Under the pieces are notes generated by a model. It saw only the letters and a program-made list of their open reading frames with translations, had not been told where the DNA came from and did no database searches. A stretch of DNA of 61,649 bases, the filler included, from Choristocarpus tenellus KU-1152 (Eukaryota; Protista; Phaeophyceae), in assembly GCA_964200185.2 (NCBI GenBank). It is 10 parts of 10 records of this genome, joined end to end, with 100 filler letters (N's around TTAATTAATTAA, not from the genome) between each part and the next. Parts side by side here need not be neighbours in the genome. Positions count along the whole stretch, not along the records: positions 21,401 to 33,389 come from CAXNAD020002037.1; 9 more parts are not named here. One strand, 5' to 3'. Below are positions 21,301 to 33,389 of this stretch, one piece after another (the first letter of the stretch is position 1; every line of letters begins with the position of its first letter). The position numbers and the translations under genes are program-made.

Positions 21301-22098
21301 NNNNNNNNNNNNNNNNNNNNNNNNNNNNNNNNNNNNNNNNNNNNTTAATTAATTAANNNNNNNNNNNNNNNNNNNNNNNNNNNNNNNNNNNNNNNNNNNN
21401 CTTGTACACATATTCTTGGGGGTATGGGTATGTCACAAACATATACAAGTCACATAAGAAGAGAGCTCAAACAAAACACAAATCTGGACCACCTTTCAAG
21501 CCTATCATTTTCACCCTACCCCTTCAAATATTCGAAAACAGTTCTCTGTACAAACGTCAGACCAACACAAAGTCCCTGCCAACAGCCAAGTCGACTAGCT
21601 CTCAATGACCAAGACACCCATACACAGTCCCTGCATCTCGAACCTTTCAAAACTAAATCCATCAAGATACTATGCTTCTCTGGTCACACCAGATGCAAAA
21701 CAGTTACACGCACTCAAACACAACCTTTGCCCAGACGACATAAAACACTAACAGAGCAACATTCGCCTCCACACTGCTCAACTACATTCATCATTCAACA
21801 TCCATCTTTTGCCAACATTTCTTTTAAACGTTTAAACAACGGGAAATTGATACTCTCAACAACCTAACCGCACAGATACACCAGCGTAAGTTATTATAAG
21901 GGGGCACCACACAGACTCTCTATACTTGACATTCACCACCATCTACCACCTTTGCAGATCATTCTATTGCTGTCCTCATCCCAGCACACAAAAGACAACA
22001 ATCAACAACACCAACAGACCAAGCTTTGTACCGAAGAACATCTAATACACAAACCAAAGCTATACACCTTTCCTTCATACACATCACAGAATACTTAC

Positions 22099-22170
22099 CA
22101 CTAACTTGGTTGTCATGGAGAACTAGCCCAGTTAGGAGCTTAAGGTTGCCAAATTCTGGTGGAATTGAAC
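22099..22170 (-). CDS. LRR exon F: GSIPPEFGNLKLLTGLVLHDNQVS
   Basis: 72 nt, CAG acceptor, GTAAG donor. Confidence 0.95.
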
Positions 22171-25100
22171 CTGCCAAACACCAACAAAAGCGCACCTTAG
22201 ACTGGATCTGTTTGACAAACAACTACTTCACACTATTCACTCACTCCTCTAGGTCTAAGTTGCACCGGATGGTCCAAACCTCTAACAAAACCATGCTTGT
22301 ACAGTATCCAATCCAAATACATAGAAAACGGAATGCTGCAATGAGATGAGAATCAGAATACATACGTACAAAAAACGTACCCCATAATTACTTCATCTAC
22401 TGACAAAATACGAACTATCCCTACCAAATTATCATACACAAATATTACAATAAACCAAATACATTATGTTGGGTCCAACTTAGGTTATCCTTCACTTCCC
22501 ACCTCTACCAACAATGAATACTTAACCACCACCTTACAACCAAAAAACGATATCTTACAACTTATGCACCGGAAACACTCCCCATCGATGAGATGTACCC
22601 AACACATAAATGACCTTGTCCTCCCATTTACAACATCAGAACCAACCACAAGACGGTTCAACTACATGACACAAACTCTCACAAAATCACATACCTTCTG
22701 CCAGAGCAACACAAACCCCCTGCCAACAGCCAAGTCAACTAGCTCTAAATGACCAAGACACCCATACAGTCCCTGCATCTCAAACCTTTCACTCTACAAA
22801 CTATATCCATCCATCAAGAAAATATGCTTCTCTGGTCACACCACATGCAAAACAGTTACACACACTCAAACACAACCTTTGCACATACGAGACAAAACAC
22901 TAACACAACAACATTCGCCTCTACACAGCTCAACTATTTTCATCATTCAACGTCCATCCTTTGCAAACATTTCTTTCAAACGTTTAAACAACAGGAAATT
23001 GATACTCACATCAACCTAATCGCACAGATACACCAACAAAAATTGTCAACAAGAGGGCACCACACAGACTCTTTATATTTGACATTCACCATCTACCACC
23101 TTTCCAGACCATACCATTGCTGTCCTCATCCCAACACAAAAAAGACAACAATCTACAACACCAACAGACCAAGCTTGCAACCAAAGAACATCTAATACAC
23201 AAACCAAAGATAGATAACATTCCTTCATACTCTACAAAGAATACTCACCACTAAGCTGGTTCTGACTGAGATCTAGTTGTGTTAGGAGCTGAAGGTTGCC
23301 AAATTCTGGTGGAATTGAACCTGCCAAACACCAACAAAAGCGCACCTTAGACTAGATCTGTTTGACAAACAACTACTTCACACTATTCACTCACTCCTCT
23401 AGGTCTAACTTGCACCAGATGGTCCAGACCTCTAACAAAACCATGCTTGTACAGTATCCAATCCAAATACATAGAAAATTGAATGCTGCAATCAGATGAG
23501 AATCAGAATACATCCATACAAAAAACGTACCCCATAATTACTTCACCTACTGACAAAATATGAACTATCCCTACCAAATTATCATACACAAATATTACAA
23601 TAAACCAAATACATTATGTTGGGTCCAACTAAGGTTATCTTACACTTGCCACCTCTACCAGACACCACCGTGCTCTACCAACAACTAATACTTAACCACC
23701 ACCTTACAACCAATAAAACATATCTTACAACTTATGCACCGGAAACATTCCCCATCGACGAGATATACCCAACACATAAATTACCTTGTCTTCCCATTTA
23801 CAACATCAGAACCAACCACAAGACGGCTCAACTGCATGACACAAAATCTCACAAATATCACATATCTTGTCATTATTCCAACAAAGGTGCATGTTAACAG
23901 TAACAAGGGAGAGGGCCTGACCTTGTACACATATTCTTGGGGGTATGGGTATGTCACAAACATATACAAGTCACATAAGAAGAGAGCTCAAACAAAACAC
24001 AAATCTGGACCACCTTTCAAACCTATCATTTTCACCCTACCCCTTCAAATATTCCAAAATAGTCCTCTGTACAAACGTCAGACCAACACAAAGTCCCTGC
24101 CAACAGCCAAGTCGACTAGCTCTCAATGACCAAGACACCCATACAGAGTCCCCGCATCTTAAAACCTTTCACTCTACAACTCAATCCTTCAAGATAGTAT
24201 GCTTCTCTGGTCACACCACATGCAAAACAGTTACACACACTCAAACACAACCTTTGCCCAGACGACATAAAACACTAACAGAGCAACATTCGCCTCCATA
24301 CTGCTCAACTACATTCATCATTCAATGTTCATCCTTTGCAGACCATTCCATTGCTGTCCTCATCCTAACCTAAAAATGAAAGCAATCAACAACACCAACA
24401 GCCCAGACTTCCTACTAAAGAGTATCCACTACAAAAACCAAAGCTATACAAAGAATACTCACCACTAAGCTGGTTTAAATGGAGAGCTAGTTTTGTTAGG
24501 AGCTGAAGGTTGCCAAGTTGCGGTGGAATTGAACCTGCCAAACACCAACAAAAGGCAGCTTAGACTGGATCTGTTTGAGAAACAACTACTTCACGCTATT
24601 CACACACTCCTCTAGGTCTAACTTGCATCAGATGGTCCAGACCTCTAATAAAACCATGCTTGTACAGTACCTAATCCAAATGCATAGAAAATTAAATGTT
24701 GCAATAAGATGAGAATCAGAATACATCCATACAAAAAACGTACTCCATAATTACTTCATCTACTGACAAAATATGAACTATCCCTACCAAATTATCATAC
24801 ACAAATATTACAATAAACCAAATACATTATGTTGGGTCCAACTAAGGTTATCTTACACTTACCACCTCTACCAGACACCACCGTGCTCTACCAACAATGA
24901 ATACTTAACCACTACCACCACCACATAAAAACATTATTACAACTTATGCACCGGAAACACTTCCCACCAACGAGATATACCCAACACATAAATTACCTTG
25001 TCTTCCCATTTACAACATCAGAACCAACCACAAGACAATTCAACTGCATGACACAAAATCTCAAGAATATCACATATCTTGTCATCATTCCAACAAAGGT

Positions 25101-28100
25101 GCATGTTAACAGTAACAAGGGAGAGGGCCTGACCTGGTACACATATTCTTGGGGGTATGGGTATGTCAAAAATATACACAAGTCACATAAGAAGAGAACT
25201 CGAACAAAACACAAATCTGGACCACCTTTCAATCCTATCAGTTTCACCCTACCCCTTCAAATATTCGAAAACAGTCCTCTGTACAAACATCAGACCAACA
25301 CAAAGTCCCTGCAAACAGCCAAGTCACACTTCAAACAAAACAATAAAACAAACTTGGACTCCAACAAGATTGAAATATTGGCACTTCTCAAAACTATCTA
25401 TCATTCATGGCATCAAAGAAAACATCTCTCCACCAAGGCTGTTCAATGATCAAGACATCACTACACTGCTCCTGCACCTCAAACCGTTTAATCTACAAAT
25501 TAACCCTATCAATATATTATGCTATTCTTCTGGTCACACCCTAATAATCCAACCATTTCAAACTCACAAAAGAACTAGTACCCAATTGTTTGCAGTCCAA
25601 TTACATCTTACCAACCAGCTTGTTGGAGCCAAGATCACACTTCTCCAGTGCAACCAGTTTCCCAAGCTCCTTAGGAATGCGCCCTGTCAGGAATTAAAAT
25701 ATAAATGATTGGTCGTGCTTCCACATTAAAGAAACACCAGTCATGCTCCTCAAAAACATCAAGTCCACCCCATCCACAATCATCTCGGACCAAAATATGT
25801 CAGCATGAAGTTATGCACACACAAACATATACGATTAGAACAGATGTGCGATACACTCTCAACATACCTCAGCGTAAAGTATCCATAGAAATATCCACCC
25901 AAGCACATGCCGTCATTCACCTTCAAACTACTTATATCATTGCACCAGAATATCATACAAGGACTAAGTGGGGTATGTGGAATATATAATTAAAATTCTT
26001 ACAACATAGTAAACGCAAGCCAAACATACCCTCAACAACCCCAACAAGACAACATACCACAATTTCCGTACGGGAAACAAACACACTGAGGGTTATCTTC
26101 ATCACAGAGTGGATCTCTTTGAGTAAATAACCAACTTGTCTTCCCAACCATATCATCACCTCTTAAAAATTCAATTGCTTCAACAAATGACACCTTGGTA
26201 TACATTCGACCTTATCACTATGTGATCTGAGTACCTCTGTGGAAGGGATAAAACACTCCAAACACTTGCAAGGCAGGAGATCACACTATTCACTCACTCC
26301 TCTAGGTCTAAGTTGCACCGGATGGTCCAAACCTCTAACAAAACCATGCTTGTACAGTATCCAATCCAAATACATAGAAAATGGAATGCTGCAATGAGAT
26401 GAGAATCAGAATACATCCATACAAAAAACGTACCCCATAATTACTTCATCTACTGCCAAAATACGAACTATCCCTACCAAATTATCATACACAAATATTA
26501 CAATAAACCAAATGCATTATGTTGTGGTTCAACTTAGGTTATCCTACACGTGCCACCTCTACCAGACACCACCGTGCTCTACCAACAATGAATATTTAAC
26601 CACCAACTTACAACCAAAAAAACATATCTTACAACTTATGCACCAGAATCACTCCCCATCAACGAGATATACCCAACACATAAATTACCTTGTCTTCCCA
26701 TTTACAACATCAGAAACAACCACAATACAATTTAACTACATGACACAAAATCTCACAAATATCACATATCTTGTCATTATTCCAACAAAAGTACACGTTA
26801 CGAGTATCAAGTCACATAAGAAGAGAGCTCAAACAAAACACAAAATTGGTCCACCTTTCAAACCTATCATTTTCACCCTACCCATTCAAATATTCCAAAC
26901 AGGCCTCTGTACAAACGCCACACCAACACAAAGTCCCCGCCAACAGCCAAGTCAATAATTTCTCAATGACCAAGACACCCATACACAGTCCCTGTATCTC
27001 AAACCTTTCACTCTACAAACTAAATCCATTCATCAAGATAATATGCTAGTCTGGTCACACCAAATGTATAATAGTTACTCACACTCAAACATAACCTTTG
27101 CCCATACGAGACAAAATACTAATACAACAACATTCTCCTCCACACTGTTCAACTACATTCATCTTTCAACGTTCATCCTTTGCAATCATTTCCTTTAAAC
27201 ATTTAAACAACGGGAAATTGATACACACAACCTAAACGCACAGATACACCAACATAAATTGTCAACAAGGTGGCACCACACAGACTCTATATATTTCACA
27301 TTCACCATCTACCACTTTTGCAGACCATTCCATTACTATCCTCATCCCAACACAAAAAAGACAACAATCAACAACGCCAAAAGACCAAGCTTGCAACCAA
27401 AGAACATCCTATACACAAACCAAAGATAGATAACATTCCTTTATGCACTACAAAGAAAACTCACCACTAAGCTGGTTGTGATCCAGACCTAGTACTGTTA
27501 GGAGCTTAAGGTTGCCAAATTCTGGTGGAATTGAACCTGCCAAACACCAACAAAAACGCACCTTAGACTGAATCTGTTAGAGTAAACAACTACTTCACAC
27601 TATTCACTCACTCCTCTATGTCTAAGTTGCACCGGATGGTCCAGACCTCTAACAAAACCATGCTTGTACAGTATCCAATCCAAATACATAGAAAATTGAA
27701 TGCTGCAATGAGATGAGAATCAGAATACATCCATACAAAAAACGCACCCCTTAATCACTTCATCTACTGACAAAATACAAACTATCCCTACCAAATTATC
27801 ATACACAATATATTATCATACACAAATATTACAATAAACCAAATACATTATGTTGGGTCCAACTTAGGTTATCCTTCACTTCCCACCTCTACCAACAATG
27901 AATATTTAAAAACCACCTTACAACCAAAAAACCGTATCTTACAACTTATGCACCGGAAACACTCCCCATCGACGAGATATACCCAACACATAAATTACCT
28001 TGTCTTCCCATTTACAACATCAGAACCAACCACAAGACGGTTCAACTACATGACACAAAATCTCACAAATATCACATATCTTGTCATTATTCCAACAAAG

Positions 28101-31100
28101 GTGCATGTTAACAGTAACAAGGGAGAGGGCCTGACCTTGTACACATATTCTTGGGGGTATGGGTATGTCACAAACATATACAAGTCACATAAGAAGAGAG
28201 CTCAAACAAAACACAAATCTGGACCACCTTCCAAACCTATCATTTTCACCCTACCCTTTCAAATATTCGAAAACAGTCCTCTGTACAAGCGTCAGACCAA
28301 CACAAAGTCCCCGCCAACAGCCAAGTCGACTAGCTCTCAATGACCAAGACACTCATACACAGTCCCTGCATCTCAAACCTTTCACTCTACAAAATAAATC
28401 CATCCATCAAGATAATATGCTAGTCTGGTCACACCACATGCAAAACAGTTACACACACTCAAACACAACCTTTGCCCAGACGACACAAAACACTAAAACA
28501 ACAACATTCGCCTCCACACTGCTCAACTATTTTCATCTTTCAACGTCTATCCTTTGCAAACATTTCTTTTAAAATTTCAAACAACGGGAAAATGATACAC
28601 ACAACAACCTTATCACACAGGTACACCAACATAACTTGTCAACAAGGGGGCACCACACAGACTCTCTATATTTCACATTCACCACCATCTACCACCTTTG
28701 CAAACCATTCCATCGCTGTCCTCATCCCAACATAAAAAAGACAACAATCAACAATGCCGAAAGACCAAGCTTGCAACCAAAGAACATCCTATACACAAAC
28801 CAAAGCTATACACCATTACTTCATACACTGCAAAGAAGACTCACCACTAAGCTGGTTGAAATAGAGACTTAGTTCTCTTAGTAGCTCAAGGTTTCCAAGA
28901 TCTGATGGAATTGAACCTGCCAAGCACCAACAAAAGCGCACCTTAGACTGGATCTGTTTGAGTAAACAATCACTTCACACTATTCACACACACCTCTGGG
29001 TCTAAGTTGCACTGGATGGTCCAAACCTCTAACAAAACCATGCTTGTACAGTATCCAATCCAAATACATAGAAAATGGAATGCTGAAACGAGATGAGAAT
29101 CAGAACAAATTCATACAAAAAACGTACCCCATAATTACTTCATCTACAACCATCTACCAGCTATGCAGACCATTCCATTGCTGTCCTCATCCCAACATAA
29201 ATAAGACATCAAGAACGGCAACGGTGCAATTTCTCATTTGCCACTATGTAACCGAATTTTCTCTCTATGTTCCTTTTCATTGCAGTCATCTTCTTTTTTC
29301 ATCTCACCTCACCGTTCTTTTCACTTCCAATTCTTTCGATAAAATATCAGCCAATGTAGCTGTAAATGAGTCACGGAAGAAATTATCATCATTGCTTTAC
29401 AAGGTTGTCCAAACATTTTTGTCATGATCCTTGTGATTTCGAGATTAGTACAAATGAGGTTGCAAAGAATAGAGGAATGACTTTAAACCTGATATATCCG
29501 GATAATTGACTTAGAAAAATGTTGCAAGGGACAGAGGAAATAAACAAAGACCATCTCCACACTCTGGGCTAAAAACAAATGCGTGCGAATACAGCAACAC
29601 AAACTTGAAATGCAACCATCACTCCAGCCTCGATCTGTTGTTATCTGCGTCTCCAATTAAAGATGTCTTACATTCTTCGAAAGTCTCGATCAAACAAAAT
29701 TATGACACCTACGTCACAACCGACATTCTGAATGATAACCCTCCCTGGTCCACCGCAATACTAAAAAGTAAAAAGTAAATGTGGTTTCCTTGGTACAAAT
29801 GTCAACAAACCTATTTCTTACAAGGCTGCTTCAGGTTGAACCCCATTGTGTTTGGAATAATGACAGAAAACAAGGAGGCAATTAAGGCGTCCTACAGAGC
29901 AACCTCGACGCCAACGGCACGAAGTGTGAATTATTAAAAAAAACACGAACACATTCTCATCTGTTCCACGTGTGTGATCAGGAACAATAATCCTTCAACG
30001 ACCATCATGAGTACAATTGTTGAAAAGAGAAGGAATGGTGCAGATCGCTGTCGTGCAAAATGTGTGCATCATCCGTAACACTAATCAAACCTCAAACTAA
30101 AACTTACATGAGAAAAAAAGTACCCATCACTAAAAGTCGGCTCAAACCTAGTCCGTTATCTCTGAAACATAGTTTTGTGTCAACCGTGTCATATGGATCC
30201 TATCAAATGCAAGAGCCTTTCGACTATCAAATGCAAGAGCCTTTCGACTATCAAATGCAAGAGCCTTTCGACACTTTTTCGCAATAACGTAAGTCGAAAA
30301 TTGAAAAAACATCTATAAAGATCAGTCCAATTCTCAGACTGCACACTCTATCATCACTTTTGGTATGATTATCTTATCACCAGGAAGGAAGGAGTAAACA
30401 TCAATAACGATCAGTCCAATTCTCAGACTACATAATCTATCATCACTTTTGGTACGATTATCTTATCACCACAAAGGAGTACTTGTAAATAGGACAGAAA
30501 ACATACCAAAATAAAACTGCATGTAATACTAGTTACTAGGAAGCCAACTTCCTTGAACCCTAAATGGTTCGGGCAGTAATACCAAAATGGAAATATATAT
30601 GAAAGATGAACACGCTATTATACCACAAGAAAAGATGCGAAACTGTCATAGAATCACAATGATGTCGTGGGAAAAACATCACAATATATTTTATCACACA
30701 AGCGACATCAATACAACAGATTCAAACCACATAATATAATGTTTTTATTAACACCTGCTGTTGTGTCGGGTCTCAAGCGTACAACACAGTTGTCATTTCA
30801 ATATGCCTCCTATGCAGCTCATCATCAGTAACAGGGAACAAGCCTTACGCAAGGTGGTGTTCAACTGACCTTGAAGGTTGTTCCCCTCCAAAACAAGCTT
30901 GGACACTCTCCCAGTGCTGTCCACCTTGACACCATACCACTCTCCGACTGGAGCAGCACTACCCCACTTCGAATTATTTGTCCAAGATGGACCACCTGTA
31001 GCCTCATACAGGGTCATGAGCACTTGGCGATCAACCACTCCGGGGGAAGACAGAGGCAAAGGGGCACATTTAACCCCAACCTTGGCAACCAGCGGCCTGC

Positions 31101-31506
31101 CTGAGTCGACCAAGGCTTGAACAATATCCATCTTGTTGCAACACTCCTTGATATCCATGCCTAGTTCATCCGCCATAGTGCACAGTTCCATCCACGAAGT
31201 GCCAGCTAGCATGCTCTTAACTGCCTCACCCCCGACCTCAGGGTATTGCAGCACTGCCTCAATTTCCGATGCACAAAAGCGTCCAATTGCTGTAAGGAGT
31301 CGCTTATCCAGCATAGAAAGAACCTCCACACTCTCGGGGGGGTAAAGATGCACAGAAGAGATCAAGTCGAGAAGGTATGCTGTTGCCTTTTGCCCTTCAG
31401 GTGTGGCAGCATTTGTGGAGTTGTCCCATAGAGGAGATAGCCTTTGAATGATGTTCTTCAGCGGGCCTTGAATTACAAACTTCTTTCCCTTTGCTGGGGA
31501 GTCGAC
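22099..31506 (-). CDS. LRR protein with one LRR per exon (candidate ROCO/immune-receptor type; partial at both ends). Exons 31506-30870, 28916-28845, 27536-27465, 25683-25612, 24534-24463, 23320-23249, 22170-22099
   Basis: The large exon ends with an LRR N-cap (DRQVLMTLYEATGGPSWTNNSKWGSAAPVGEWYGVKVDSTGRVSKLVLEGNNLQG, phase-1 GT donor). Six 72-nt CAG/GT-bounded phase 1-1 exons follow, each encoding GxIPxxxGxLxxLxxLxLxxNxLx. Confidence 0.92.
23249..23320 (-). CDS. LRR exon E: GSIPPEFGNLQLLTQLDLSQNQLS
   Basis: 72 nt, CAG acceptor, GTGAG donor. Confidence 0.95.
24463..24534 (-). CDS. LRR exon D: GSIPPQLGNLQLLTKLALHLNQLS
   Basis: 72 nt, CAG acceptor, GTGAG donor. Confidence 0.95.
25612..25683 (-). 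CDS. Divergent LRR exon C: GRIPKELGKLVALEKCDLGSNKLV
   Basis: 72 nt, CAG acceptor, GTAAG donor, in a non-repeat intron context. Confidence 0.9.
27465..27536 (-). CDS. LRR exon B: GSIPPEFGNLKLLTVLGLDHNQLS
   Basis: 72 nt, CAG acceptor, GTGAG donor. Confidence 0.95.
28845..28916 (-). CDS. LRR exon A: GSIPSDLGNLELLRELSLYFNQLS
   Basis: 72 nt, CAG acceptor, GTGAG donor. Confidence 0.95.
30200..30272. repeat. 24-bp tandem repeat x3 (CTATCAAATGCAAGAGCCTTTCGA); a ~59-bp duplication follows at 30320/30409
   Basis: Read directly; lies in an intron of the LRR gene. Confidence 0.9.
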
Positions 31507-33189
31507 CTTCAAAGAAAACGGAATTGTCACACAGATGAGAAGGCACACCAGGTCAATGGAAATATCTTCCCATACAGTCACAATATCAGTACTGCATTGG
31601 ACCAAAACATGCTTTCATCAATTTGGTATTTCATTCCAGTCTTGATCAGACTTCTATACCCTGAACACACTACACGTTGGTCAGAGTATAGGACTGTACC
31701 TAGCAACTAAGGTAATCCGATGCCCTCAATTTTTGGTCTGCAGCAGTGATCAAGGGCACCATCAAAAATGCCCCAGGCTGCACAGAAAAAATCAGCCCTG
31801 TCCATTATAACAACAAACCATTTCCCTTTCCCATTCATCACACTCTTTTTTTGTAACAATTGCTTGCACATCAAGTGTGTTGAGTGGATTAGAGGGTCAC
31901 CTTGCTATGCTGAATGTAACCAGCGACCACAGCAATAACCCCTGCTCTCATCCGAACCTCTAGAGTGTGACCTTGGACTAATGCGATATTGGCACTTCTC
32001 TCAGCTTCCATCAGGTATCGCACATCCCCTTCACTGGCAACGTAACTGTTCAAATTGTTTTCTGCTACCGGAAGATGGGCATCCTATACAAACAAAACCG
32101 CATCAGGGATGAAGTGTCAGGTTCGAAGAGGTTTGGAGTTAATATCAAGCAATGCGAAGTTGAGATTGTTGATGTGACCTTTATATTCAATTCCAAACAT
32201 ACTTCTCCTCAACATGTCAAAGCTTTGATGATATTTGCAAAGGCTGTATAATAATATTTCCGAAATAATCTTTTAGAAACACATGTGGTGCACATGACGT
32301 AAGCGATCGCTATCATACATACATGCTTACCCTCACTACTTGGAGAGTTGGAAATGGCTTCTGAGAACAAACTGCAAACGCTCACTTCAAAGGAGATAAA
32401 ACACTACCAAATTTTACAGCATACAATGATACAGCAAGGTACATATATTTCACAATCCTGTTTGCACGCTCTACAACAGAGCGTCCACAGTATCAAAAAA
32501 CAGTGTTCCTGTCTCTCACTTGTAAAACGTTCTCCATAGTGGTGCGTTTATGGCAGGTTACTTTACCTCTCAAAATGTATTCCCCCCTACCATGGGCAGG
32601 TACTGATTTTCACTATGCAACTTCAACTATTTGAAGTAGAATGTACATTTCAGAAGCTGAATTTGAAAAGTGACATAGAAACCAATCACAGGATCTAAGT
32701 GATGTTAATAAATTTATCATCTCATATACAAACAGTATCTAATCACCTTCCAGACCAAATCATTTGCTCGCTATTCCATTGAGTGTATCAGCATGCTGCA
32801 CGATCTTCAAATTTATCATTGCAGCAGCACCAACCACCTAGCAATGCATACCCGCTTCCACTTATTGCAACCACATTCAAGTTTTTTCAAGCCCCTTCAA
32901 TACTCAAAAAATCATCTCGAATTCCAACTGTAGCATACTTCCTAGCAAAATACAAATGTCACCAATTTCATTCTTAATGACAGACGTCTAGAGATACTCT
33001 ACATAAAAATTGCATGGTTACTAGGTATATTTTGAAAAAATGGATTTTCATCATACCTTCCAGTTCTGCAAGGACAGCAAAAGAGAAATACTGTACTCAA
33101 TTATAAACAGTACGTTTGAAATAATATAGTACAGCAAATACAAAATGAGAGGATAATTGTCTGTTGGTGCCATTAAGTGGCATCTGTAT

Positions 33190-33389
33190 TGCTTAAAGTA
33201 TCTGGTCAGGGGGGTTCTACATCACGGTGTGGATTTTGGCCCTGACCATCAAAAGTACTCTTACATTTTCCATTCCACACATGCGACCAAATCACCCAAA
33301 AAATGTGACATGGACAAATGGACCCCAAATGGACAGTCGCCCCACCCCCACCCCCCCCCCCCCCCCCCCCCCCCCCTCCTCCCCCCCTC
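33190..33389. mobile_element. MITE family A at contig end
   Basis: gcttaaagtatctgg...ccccaaatggacagtcgcc followed by poly-C. Confidence 0.75.

What the first reader, a model, noticed from the sequence alone, without database searches (positions are those of the whole stretch)
21401..31506. One-LRR-per-exon tandem array: candidate exon-shuffling immune receptor
Seen: after an LRR N-cap exon there are six LRR exons, each exactly 72 nt and phase 1-1. Five of them are embedded in a repeated >1-kb intron unit, and the array continues off the contig. Any gain, loss, skipping or swap of a unit keeps the reading frame. Established: Ectocarpus ROCO LRR-GTPases and NB-ARC-TPR genes have repeat-per-exon arrays proposed as shuffling pathogen receptors. 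Inference: this is such a diversity-generating locus, with very recent unit turnover. Only exon F appears in the supplied ORF track; the other five are too short.
Basis: partly seen in the sequence, partly recalled or inferred. Interest (0 to 1): 0.92.

Follow-up and report, generated by a model that had tools for sequence, protein, structure and literature searches.

The report
Brown-alga one-LRR-per-exon cassette gene
This is a real but already known kind of gene: a brown-alga (Choristocarpus tenellus) leucine-rich-repeat protein whose repeats are each encoded by one 72-base exon in a tandemly duplicated cassette, as first described in Ectocarpus in 2012.

Summary
On the minus strand, an exon with an LRR N-cap (31506-30870) is followed by six 72-nt AG/GT exons in phase 1-1. 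Each encodes one 24-residue LRR. Five sit in a 1.15-1.4 kb head-to-tail intron+exon unit. Chance expects 0.065 such exons.

The piece is a whole 11,989-nt contig of the brown alga Choristocarpus tenellus. The exons are the published "type I LRR exon" of brown algae (Zambounis 2012; Teng 2024). So this is a new member of a known kind, not a new system.

New details:
- The four concave-face codons 15/17/19/20 differ at 0.54 per site. The rest of the exon differs at 0.10 and flanking introns at 0.08-0.17.
- The units are mosaics. Tracts reach 97-99% identity against a background of 84-92%.
- Exon C lies in a 955-nt foreign segment.
- The N-terminal 270 residues form a helical domain shared with LRR-only proteins of Ectocarpus, Nemacystus and Cladosiphon. 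None shows Roc-COR, so the gene is probably not a ROCO.
- The deposited annotation splits the gene in two.

Somatic shuffling is untested. One run holds spliced exon-exon contigs, but these may come from paralogues.

The parts
31901..32083 (-). Upstream coding exon (183 nt, phase 0-0, 61 aa), first part of the conserved helical N-terminal domain
   Evidence: AG/GT bounded open frame. 52% identical over 61 aa to Ectocarpus P0104/P0106/P0152. Profile hit E 2e-9. Joined to the next exon in the deposited model P0003.
30870..31506 (-). N-cap exon (637 nt, phase 0 to 1): helical domain, linker and LRR N-terminal cap (LRRNT)
   Evidence: AF2 model pLDDT 85.7. Residues 212-272 of the model match an LRRNT cluster, TM 0.86 by the match.
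28917..30869 (-). First LRR-domain intron (1,953 nt). Its last 231 nt are the conserved upstream flank of the repeat unit.
   Evidence: 88-95% identical to the unit 3' ends. Tandem repeats at 30200-30272 and 30307-30478.
28845..28916 (-). LRR exon A (GSIPSDLGNLELLRELSLYFNQLS)
27465..27536 (-). LRR exon B (GSIPPEFGNLKLLTVLGLDHNQLS)
25326..26280 (-). Unique 955-nt segment carrying exon C. It replaces the exon-bearing part of a repeat unit (cassette swap).
   Evidence: Blast breakpoints at unit B position 1256 and unit C position 359. Presence map.
25612..25683 (-). LRR exon C, divergent type (GRIPKELGKLVALEKCDLGSNKLV)
24463..24534 (-). LRR exon D (GSIPPQLGNLQLLTKLALHLNQLS)
23249..23320 (-). LRR exon E (GSIPPEFGNLQLLTQLDLSQNQLS)
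22099..22170 (-). LRR exon F (GSIPPEFGNLKLLTGLVLHDNQVS), last exon before the contig edge
21401..28916 (-). Head-to-tail array of six exon+intron units of 1,380, 1,853, 1,149, 1,214, 1,150 and >770 nt, cut by the contig end
   Evidence: No inverted copies.

Best explanation
This is a partial nuclear gene of the brown alga Choristocarpus tenellus, on the minus strand and cut by the contig at its 3' end, and probably at its 5' end too. It encodes a protein with a conserved all-helical N-terminal domain, an LRR N-cap and a run of plant-type 24-residue LRRs. Each LRR is encoded by one 72-nt phase 1-1 exon, the 'type I LRR exon' known from brown algae. The array grew in the germline by tandem duplication of exon+intron cassettes. 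Unequal crossing-over or gene conversion has since mixed the cassettes, and one cassette was replaced by a foreign LRR exon with its own flanks. Selection has diversified the four residues per repeat that line the concave, ligand-binding face. Shown: the exon structure, the homology, the unit mosaic and the concentration of substitutions. Inferred: the protein is a ligand-binding sensor, possibly of pathogens, and the frame-neutral cassettes let repeat number and order change by recombination or exon skipping. It most likely belongs to the non-ROCO, LRR-only type I loci, not to the ROCO GTPases.
For: - Organism and contig.
- Six 72-nt phase 1-1 LRR exons against 0.065 expected.
- Published definition of the type I exon (72 nt, GxxPxxLxxxxxLxxLxLxxNxLx, selected sites 15/17/19/20; found in ROCOs, 5 LRR-kinases and 46 other LRR loci of Ectocarpus).
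- Codons 15/17/19/20 differ at 0.54 per site, the rest of the exon at 0.097, and flanking introns at 0.08-0.17. Variable sites are 10 of 12 against 13 of 60, Fisher p = 9e-5.
- The nearest-neighbour unit changes along the unit, with tracts of 97-99% identity.
- Exon C lies in a unique 955-nt segment.
- N-domain homologues have the same exon boundaries in Ectocarpus sp. 6.
- Homologues from Nemacystus (816 aa, 16 LRRs, ends 19 aa after the last LRR) and Cladosiphon (558 aa) show only LRR in Pfam.
- Run X3 holds contigs that join 72-nt LRR exons exactly at the predicted splice sites.
Against: - The contig ends inside the array, so the C-terminal part is unseen. A Roc-COR or kinase part cannot be excluded directly.
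- Homologue gene models are automatic and often truncated at the small exons.
- Run X3, the only one that looks like RNA, has no contig on this locus's own N-cap exon. Expression of this very copy is therefore not shown.
- The excess at the four codons is computed on five related exons that also exchange sequence, so it is not a formal dN/dS test.
- The immune role is inferred from the literature on related loci. No brown-alga LRR protein of this kind has a proven ligand.
Confidence: 0.8

Rival explanations
1. It is an LRR-ROCO GTPase gene of the published brown-alga family. The Roc-COR part lies beyond the contig edge.
For: Same type I exons as Ectocarpus ROCOs. The array is cut off at 21401, so downstream domains are unseen.
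Against: Ectocarpus ROCOs start with about 45 residues of LRRNT directly at the N-terminus. Here at least 215 residues of a helical domain precede it. All 11 relatives sharing that domain, up to 1,128 aa, lack Roc/COR in Pfam. The Nemacystus model ends 19 aa after its 16th LRR.
Confidence: 0.13
2. It is a somatic diversity generator. Cassettes are rearranged by programmed recombination in individual cells, as hypothesised for Ectocarpus in 2012.
For: Frame-neutral cassettes, mosaic units with 97-99% identical tracts and an exon A to C-type junction contig that omits exon B in run X3 are all compatible with it.
Against: One assembly cannot show somatic change. The mosaic is equally explained by germline unequal crossing-over and gene conversion. 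There are no inverted or inactivated exon copies. The junction contig can come from a paralogue or from exon skipping. No recombinase or signal sequence is evident.
Confidence: 0.04
3. It is a decaying or unexpressed duplicate (pseudogene), or the repeat array is partly an assembly artefact.
For: The contig is only 12 kb and ends in a repeat. Run X3 shows no contig on this copy's N-cap exon. All three runs carry a 95% variant of that exon instead.
Against: All eight exons are open with canonical splice sites. Changes are concentrated in the functional codons, not spread at random. Each unit has its own indels and substitutions. Run X1 has zero-difference contigs on unit-specific stretches 27033-27526.
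Confidence: 0.05

Closest known systems
Type I LRR exon loci of Ectocarpus outside the ROCO and kinase families (46 of 164 'other' LRR loci; Zambounis et al. 2012, PMC3341825). Examples: CBJ33668.1 'Hypothetical leucine rich repeat protein' and CBN75537.1.
   Same: One LRR per 72-nt symmetric exon with the same motif register. The same two N-terminal exons and helical domain (43% identity, E 5e-42). Intron flanks are duplicated together with the exons.
   Different: In Choristocarpus the cassettes are compact (1.15-1.85 kb, against 3.5-17 kb spacing in Ectocarpus sp. 6). They are also more alike (85-99% against 77-82%). The species belongs to the lineage that split first from the other brown algae.
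Brown-alga LRR-ROCO GTPases (Ectocarpus, Saccharina and others; PMC3341825, PMC11378527)
   Same: Exon length, phase symmetry and LRR motif. The same four diversifying positions on the concave face. Tandem LRR exons that can be alternatively spliced.
   Different: No Roc-COR is seen here or in relatives. A long helical N-terminal domain precedes the LRRNT. There are no antisense or inactivated intronic LRR exons.
Plant-specific 24-residue LRR proteins such as PGIP (used as modelling template in PMC3341825)
   Same: 24-residue repeat with the LxxLxLxxNxLxGxIPxxLxxL consensus, and an LRRNT-type cap with conserved W/G residues.
   Different: Plant genes do not encode one repeat per exon. There is no evidence here of secretion. 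The N-terminal domain is unrelated.
Lamprey VLR loci (LRR cassettes assembled somatically)
   Same: LRR cassettes as units of receptor diversity. This is an analogy drawn by the 2012 authors.
   Different: VLR assembly copies flanking cassettes into an incomplete germline gene using cytidine deaminases. Here the cassettes are ordinary spliced exons of a complete array, and no somatic change is shown.

Membership tests
Brown-alga type I LRR exon architecture (Zambounis 2012) | Each LRR encoded by a single 72-nt exon | tested here: met
   Six exons of exactly 72 nt with AG/GT. Definition.
Brown-alga type I LRR exon architecture (Zambounis 2012) | Exon register GxxPxxLxxxxxLxxLxLxxNxLx (not the offset type II register) | tested here: met
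   All six exons start G-x-I-P and end N-x-[LV]-x. There are conservative replacements at position 7 (F in B, E, F), position 16 (C in exon C) and position 23 (V in exon F).
Brown-alga type I LRR exon architecture (Zambounis 2012) | Symmetric intron phase, so that exon gain or loss keeps the frame | tested here: met
   The codon is split after its first base at both ends of every exon, and the N-cap exon ends in the same phase. Teng 2024 calls the same arrangement 'phase 2'.
Brown-alga type I LRR exon architecture (Zambounis 2012) | Diversification at concave-face positions 15, 17, 19 and 20 | tested here: met
   0.54 differences per site there, against 0.097 in the rest of the exon and 0.08-0.17 in introns. 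Fisher p = 9e-5. This is not a formal codon-model test.
Brown-alga type I LRR exon architecture (Zambounis 2012) | Signs of shuffling: intact or inactivated LRR exons in introns or on the non-coding strand | tested here: not met
   No further LRR-like sequence on either strand. No inverted repeats of 40 nt or more. Only tandem units and one replaced cassette.
ROCO GTPases | Roc GTPase domain followed by a COR domain | not testable with these tools
   The contig ends inside the LRR array. Relatives with the same N-domain show no Roc/COR.
ROCO GTPases (Ectocarpus type) | LRRNT-like cap of about 45 residues at the very N-terminus | tested here: not met
   At least 215 residues of helical domain precede the cap. 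ROCO description.
NB-ARC-TPR family of brown algae | NB-ARC domain and TPR exons | tested here: not met
   No Pfam NB-ARC or TPR hit in the window's exons or in homologues. The repeats are LRRs.
Helical N-domain + LRR family (CBJ33668.1 / CBN75537.1 group) | Conserved helical domain of about 200 residues encoded by a 61-63 aa exon plus the N-cap exon | tested here: met
   38-45% identity to nine relatives with 34 invariant columns. Same exon boundaries in Ectocarpus sp. 6. Confident all-alpha model.

The most novel reading that the evidence does not exclude
The helical-N-domain/LRR proteins are an unrecognised class of cassette-exon receptors, separate from ROCO and NB-ARC-TPR. On this reading the class dates from the base of the brown algae, and its LRR cassettes are combined variably within an individual, by regulated exon skipping or by somatic recombination, to give a receptor repertoire. 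The contig in run X3 that joins exon A directly to a C-type exon would be a first trace of this.
Probability: 0.1. Interest if true: 0.75.

Novelty: new member of a known kind. Interest (0 to 1): 0.38.

Why it matters
The locus shows the one-repeat-per-exon LRR cassette design, with diversification at the same four ligand-face positions, in Choristocarpus. That alga belongs to the lineage that split off before all other brown algae. It also occurs in a gene family other than the ROCO GTPases. The design is therefore probably ancestral to brown algae and is a general property of their type I LRR genes. The compact, well-resolved array (six cassettes in 7.5 kb) is a convenient place to measure cassette turnover and exon skipping with long reads. 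It also shows that automatic annotation breaks such genes apart: here into a 297-aa fragment with intron read-through and a separate 103-aa model.

Tried and rejected
- **Pfam on the N-terminal exons and on each 23-aa LRR exon.** Nothing was significant. The exons are too short, with best LRR_8 E = 0.0065. LRR identity rests on the motif and on tblastn to Ectocarpus LRRs.
- **Fold searches of the helical domain.** Foldseek/PDB gave no hit at E <= 0.001. VIA-align wide gave best Z 9.7 on designed helical repeats and TPR-like proteins, below the level that means anything for helical bundles. The Atlas recognised only the LRRNT part. No function can be assigned.
- **Fold of the further N-terminal region of the Nemacystus relative.** Residues 1-109 had pLDDT 30-44 and are unusable.
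- **Search for more upstream exons in 32084-33389.** tblastn and a family profile found none.
- **Large multi-cap proteins at the top of the library search (P0092, P0108, P0112).** These are unrelated proteins sharing only LRRNT/LRR.
- **Rfam scan.** Nothing found.
- **RNA support.** None of the three runs is on record as RNA, and only Logan contigs were available. Strand, level and isoforms could not be measured.
- **Joined spliced model.** Exons were searched one by one by reference. The only joined sequence used was the database's own model P0003, trimmed to residues 1-272.
Full report
**What is there**

The piece (window 21401-33389) is one whole contig of 11,989 nt. It is CAXNAD020002037.1 of assembly GCA_964200185.2, from the brown alga Choristocarpus tenellus. 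The gene lies on the minus strand. I found eight exons.

| Exon | Window coordinates (minus strand) | Size and phase |
|---|---|---|
| Upstream exon | 32083-31901 | 183 nt, phase 0-0 |
| N-cap exon | 31506-30870 | 637 nt, phase 0 in, phase 1 out |
| LRR exon A | 28916-28845 | 72 nt, phase 1-1 |
| LRR exon B | 27536-27465 | 72 nt, phase 1-1 |
| LRR exon C | 25683-25612 | 72 nt, phase 1-1 |
| LRR exon D | 24534-24463 | 72 nt, phase 1-1 |
| LRR exon E | 23320-23249 | 72 nt, phase 1-1 |
| LRR exon F | 22170-22099 | 72 nt, phase 1-1 |

- All exons have AG acceptors and GT donors.
- Every 72-nt exon reads as one plant-type 24-residue LRR. An example is G-SIPPEFGNLKLLTVLGLDHNQLS.
- The same scan finds no such exon on the plus strand. 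It finds a mean of 0.065 (maximum 1) in 200 shuffles.
- Exon F has a donor site, and the contig ends 698 nt later inside a copy of the repeat. The gene is therefore cut off there.
- No further upstream exon could be found in 32084-33389. The 5' end is unresolved.

**The repeat**

Exons A, B, D, E and F each sit in a head-to-tail unit of 1,150-1,380 nt. Unit B is lengthened to 1,853 nt. Whole units are 85-94% identical. The nearest relative of a unit changes along its length, and some tracts are 97-99% identical. Examples are A with D, D with F, and B with E. This is the pattern left by unequal crossing-over or gene conversion among units.

Exon C is of a different LRR subtype (GRIPKELGKLVALEKCDLGSNKLV). 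It lies in a 955-nt segment (about 26280-25326) with no counterpart in the other units. That segment replaces the exon-bearing part of a unit, so it is a swapped cassette. There are no inverted copies, and no extra intact or broken LRR exons in the introns on either strand.

**Where the exons differ**

Among the five repeated exons, the first 40 nt are identical in B and F. The last 13 nt are identical in A, B, D and E.

| Region compared | Mean pairwise difference per site |
|---|---|
| Codons 15, 17, 19, 20 | 0.54 |
| Rest of the exon | 0.097 |
| 200 nt of upstream intron | 0.08 |
| 200 nt of downstream intron | 0.17 |

Variable sites number 10 of 12 in those four codons, against 13 of 60 elsewhere (Fisher p = 9e-5). 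These are the x positions of LxxLxLxxN on the concave face. They are the same positions reported under positive selection in Ectocarpus and Saccharina (15, 17, 19, 20, or 14, 16, 18, 19 in the 23-residue numbering). My measure is a simple count on related, recombining sequences. It is not a codon-model test.

**What it is**

Zambounis et al. 2012 (PMC3341825) defined the 'type I LRR exon' of Ectocarpus as a 72-nt exon encoding GxxPxxLxxxxxLxxLxLxxNxLx. It occurs in 37 LRR-ROCO GTPases, in five LRR-kinases and in 46 of 164 other LRR loci. Teng et al. 2024 (PMC11378527) found the same in four brown algae, with alternative splicing of the LRR exons. The window's exons meet that definition in length, register and phase symmetry. 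The finding is thus a further instance of a known architecture, in a species where I found no earlier description of it.

**Which family**

The two N-terminal exons encode about 215 residues before the LRR cap. A search of 1.84 billion representatives found the deposited partial model of this gene (P0003, 100% identical). It also found relatives covering the whole N-terminal part. Further searches found 11 relatives in Ectocarpus species, Nemacystus decipiens and Cladosiphon okamuranus. They are 38-45% identical to the window's protein, with 34 invariant columns. In Ectocarpus sp. 6 the same two exons, the same donor phase after 'NNLxG' and 72-nt LRR exons recur. There the introns are 3.5-17 kb and the exon flanks are 77-82% identical.

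Pfam finds only LRRs in these proteins. The Nemacystus model has 16 LRRs and ends 19 residues after the last one. The Cladosiphon model P0161 has five LRRs and a lysine-rich tail. Ectocarpus ROCOs, by contrast, begin directly with a cap of about 45 residues. I therefore place the gene among the non-ROCO type I LRR loci. About 13% is left for a ROCO whose GTPase part lies off the contig.

An AlphaFold2 model of residues 1-272 is confident (pLDDT 85.7) and all-helical up to the cap. Fold searches give only generic helical-repeat matches. The Atlas search recognises only the cap itself. The role of the N-terminal domain is unknown.

**Transcripts and other copies**

Three runs of one study hold 25-41% of the stretch's words. 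None is on record as RNA, and only Logan contigs could be laid.

- X1 and X2 cover introns, with zero differences on unique stretches. They look like DNA of the same strain.
- X3 has high word depth on the 200-base bins that hold the LRR exons, and none or little on many intron bins. It holds two contigs that join LRR exons at the predicted splice sites.
  - One joins exon A (75 of 75 identical) directly to the first 16 nt of a C-type exon, without exon B.
  - One joins a B-type exon with a new set of variable residues (H, D, H, S) to a C-type exon that reads GHIPKE.
- The second contig must come from a paralogue or allele. The first could be exon-B skipping or a paralogue.
- X3 has no contig on this copy's N-cap exon. 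All three runs carry a 95%-identical variant of that exon at about twice the depth of the neighbouring unique intron.

So splicing of type I exons in this organism is supported, and other copies exist. Expression of this very copy is not shown.

**How it most likely works**

Shown:
- a cassette array in which any unit can be gained, lost, skipped or swapped without shifting the frame;
- germline duplication, exchange and one swap;
- substitutions focused on the ligand face.

Inferred:
- the protein binds ligands through its LRR arc;
- its repeat number and surface evolve quickly, as expected of a recognition protein;
- an immune role is plausible by analogy with the published candidate receptors but is untested;

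**Annotation note**

The deposited annotation splits the gene. One part is CAM9341471.1, which reads 25 residues into the intron after the N-cap exon. The other is a separate 103-aa model across 27543-23232.

**Method note**

Exons were handled one by one by reference. The only joined sequence used was the database's own P0003, trimmed to residues 1-272.

**Verdict**

It is probably wrong about ROCO-type membership, and it is unproven as a diversity generator. This is a new member of a known kind, of moderate interest.

Noticed in passing
window 30200-30272 and 30307-30478: A perfect 24-nt x3 tandem repeat and an 89-nt x1.9 repeat (90% identical) lie inside the 1,953-nt intron between the N-cap exon and LRR exon A.
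   Followed up: no
window 21401-29400 versus 29400-32400: There is strong strand asymmetry in the array introns. The plus strand has C far above G (GC skew -0.26 to -0.57) and A above T, while the rest of the gene is near -0.1. So the introns of the coding strand are G+T rich. The cause is unknown.
   Followed up: no
window 27960-28160 (copies at 21401-21649, 23922-24170, 25134-25382): This part of the intron unit has 20-60 times the word depth of unique intron in all three runs. It is missing from units B and E. It may be a dispersed short repeat, or an element shared by many paralogous arrays.
   Followed up: partly
window 30705-31477: All three runs hold a 95%-identical variant of the N-cap exon and the start of its intron (38 differences in 773 nt), at about twice the depth of the adjacent unique intron. 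None holds the reference version. This is a paralogue or a second allele.
   Followed up: partly
window 33340-33387: A C-rich homopolymer-like tract lies at the contig end. It may be why the assembly stops there.
   Followed up: no
window 23232-27543 and 30793-32080 (L001 5847-10158 and 1310-2597): The deposited annotation splits the gene into a 297-aa partial product with 25 residues of intron read-through and a separate 103-aa product made of LRR exons.
   Followed up: yes
L002 (Ectocarpus sp. 6) 16169-80479: The orthologous gene has the same two N-terminal exons. Its 72-nt LRR exons lie 3.5-17 kb apart with flanks 77-82% identical. One more LRR exon at 80408 lies beyond the end of the deposited 775-aa model, whose first 279 residues look like a fused upstream gene.
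   Followed up: partly
P0106, P0135, P0158 (relatives): The last helix-turn-helix of the N-domain (about 35 residues, 'TM..L..LA.E.DVD...C.SK..V.QALL.SGK.L') is duplicated in some relatives. E. siliculosus CBN75537.1 (P0158) also carries a long run of coiled 'ATTAQLAGV..QVHGV' repeats upstream.
   Followed up: no
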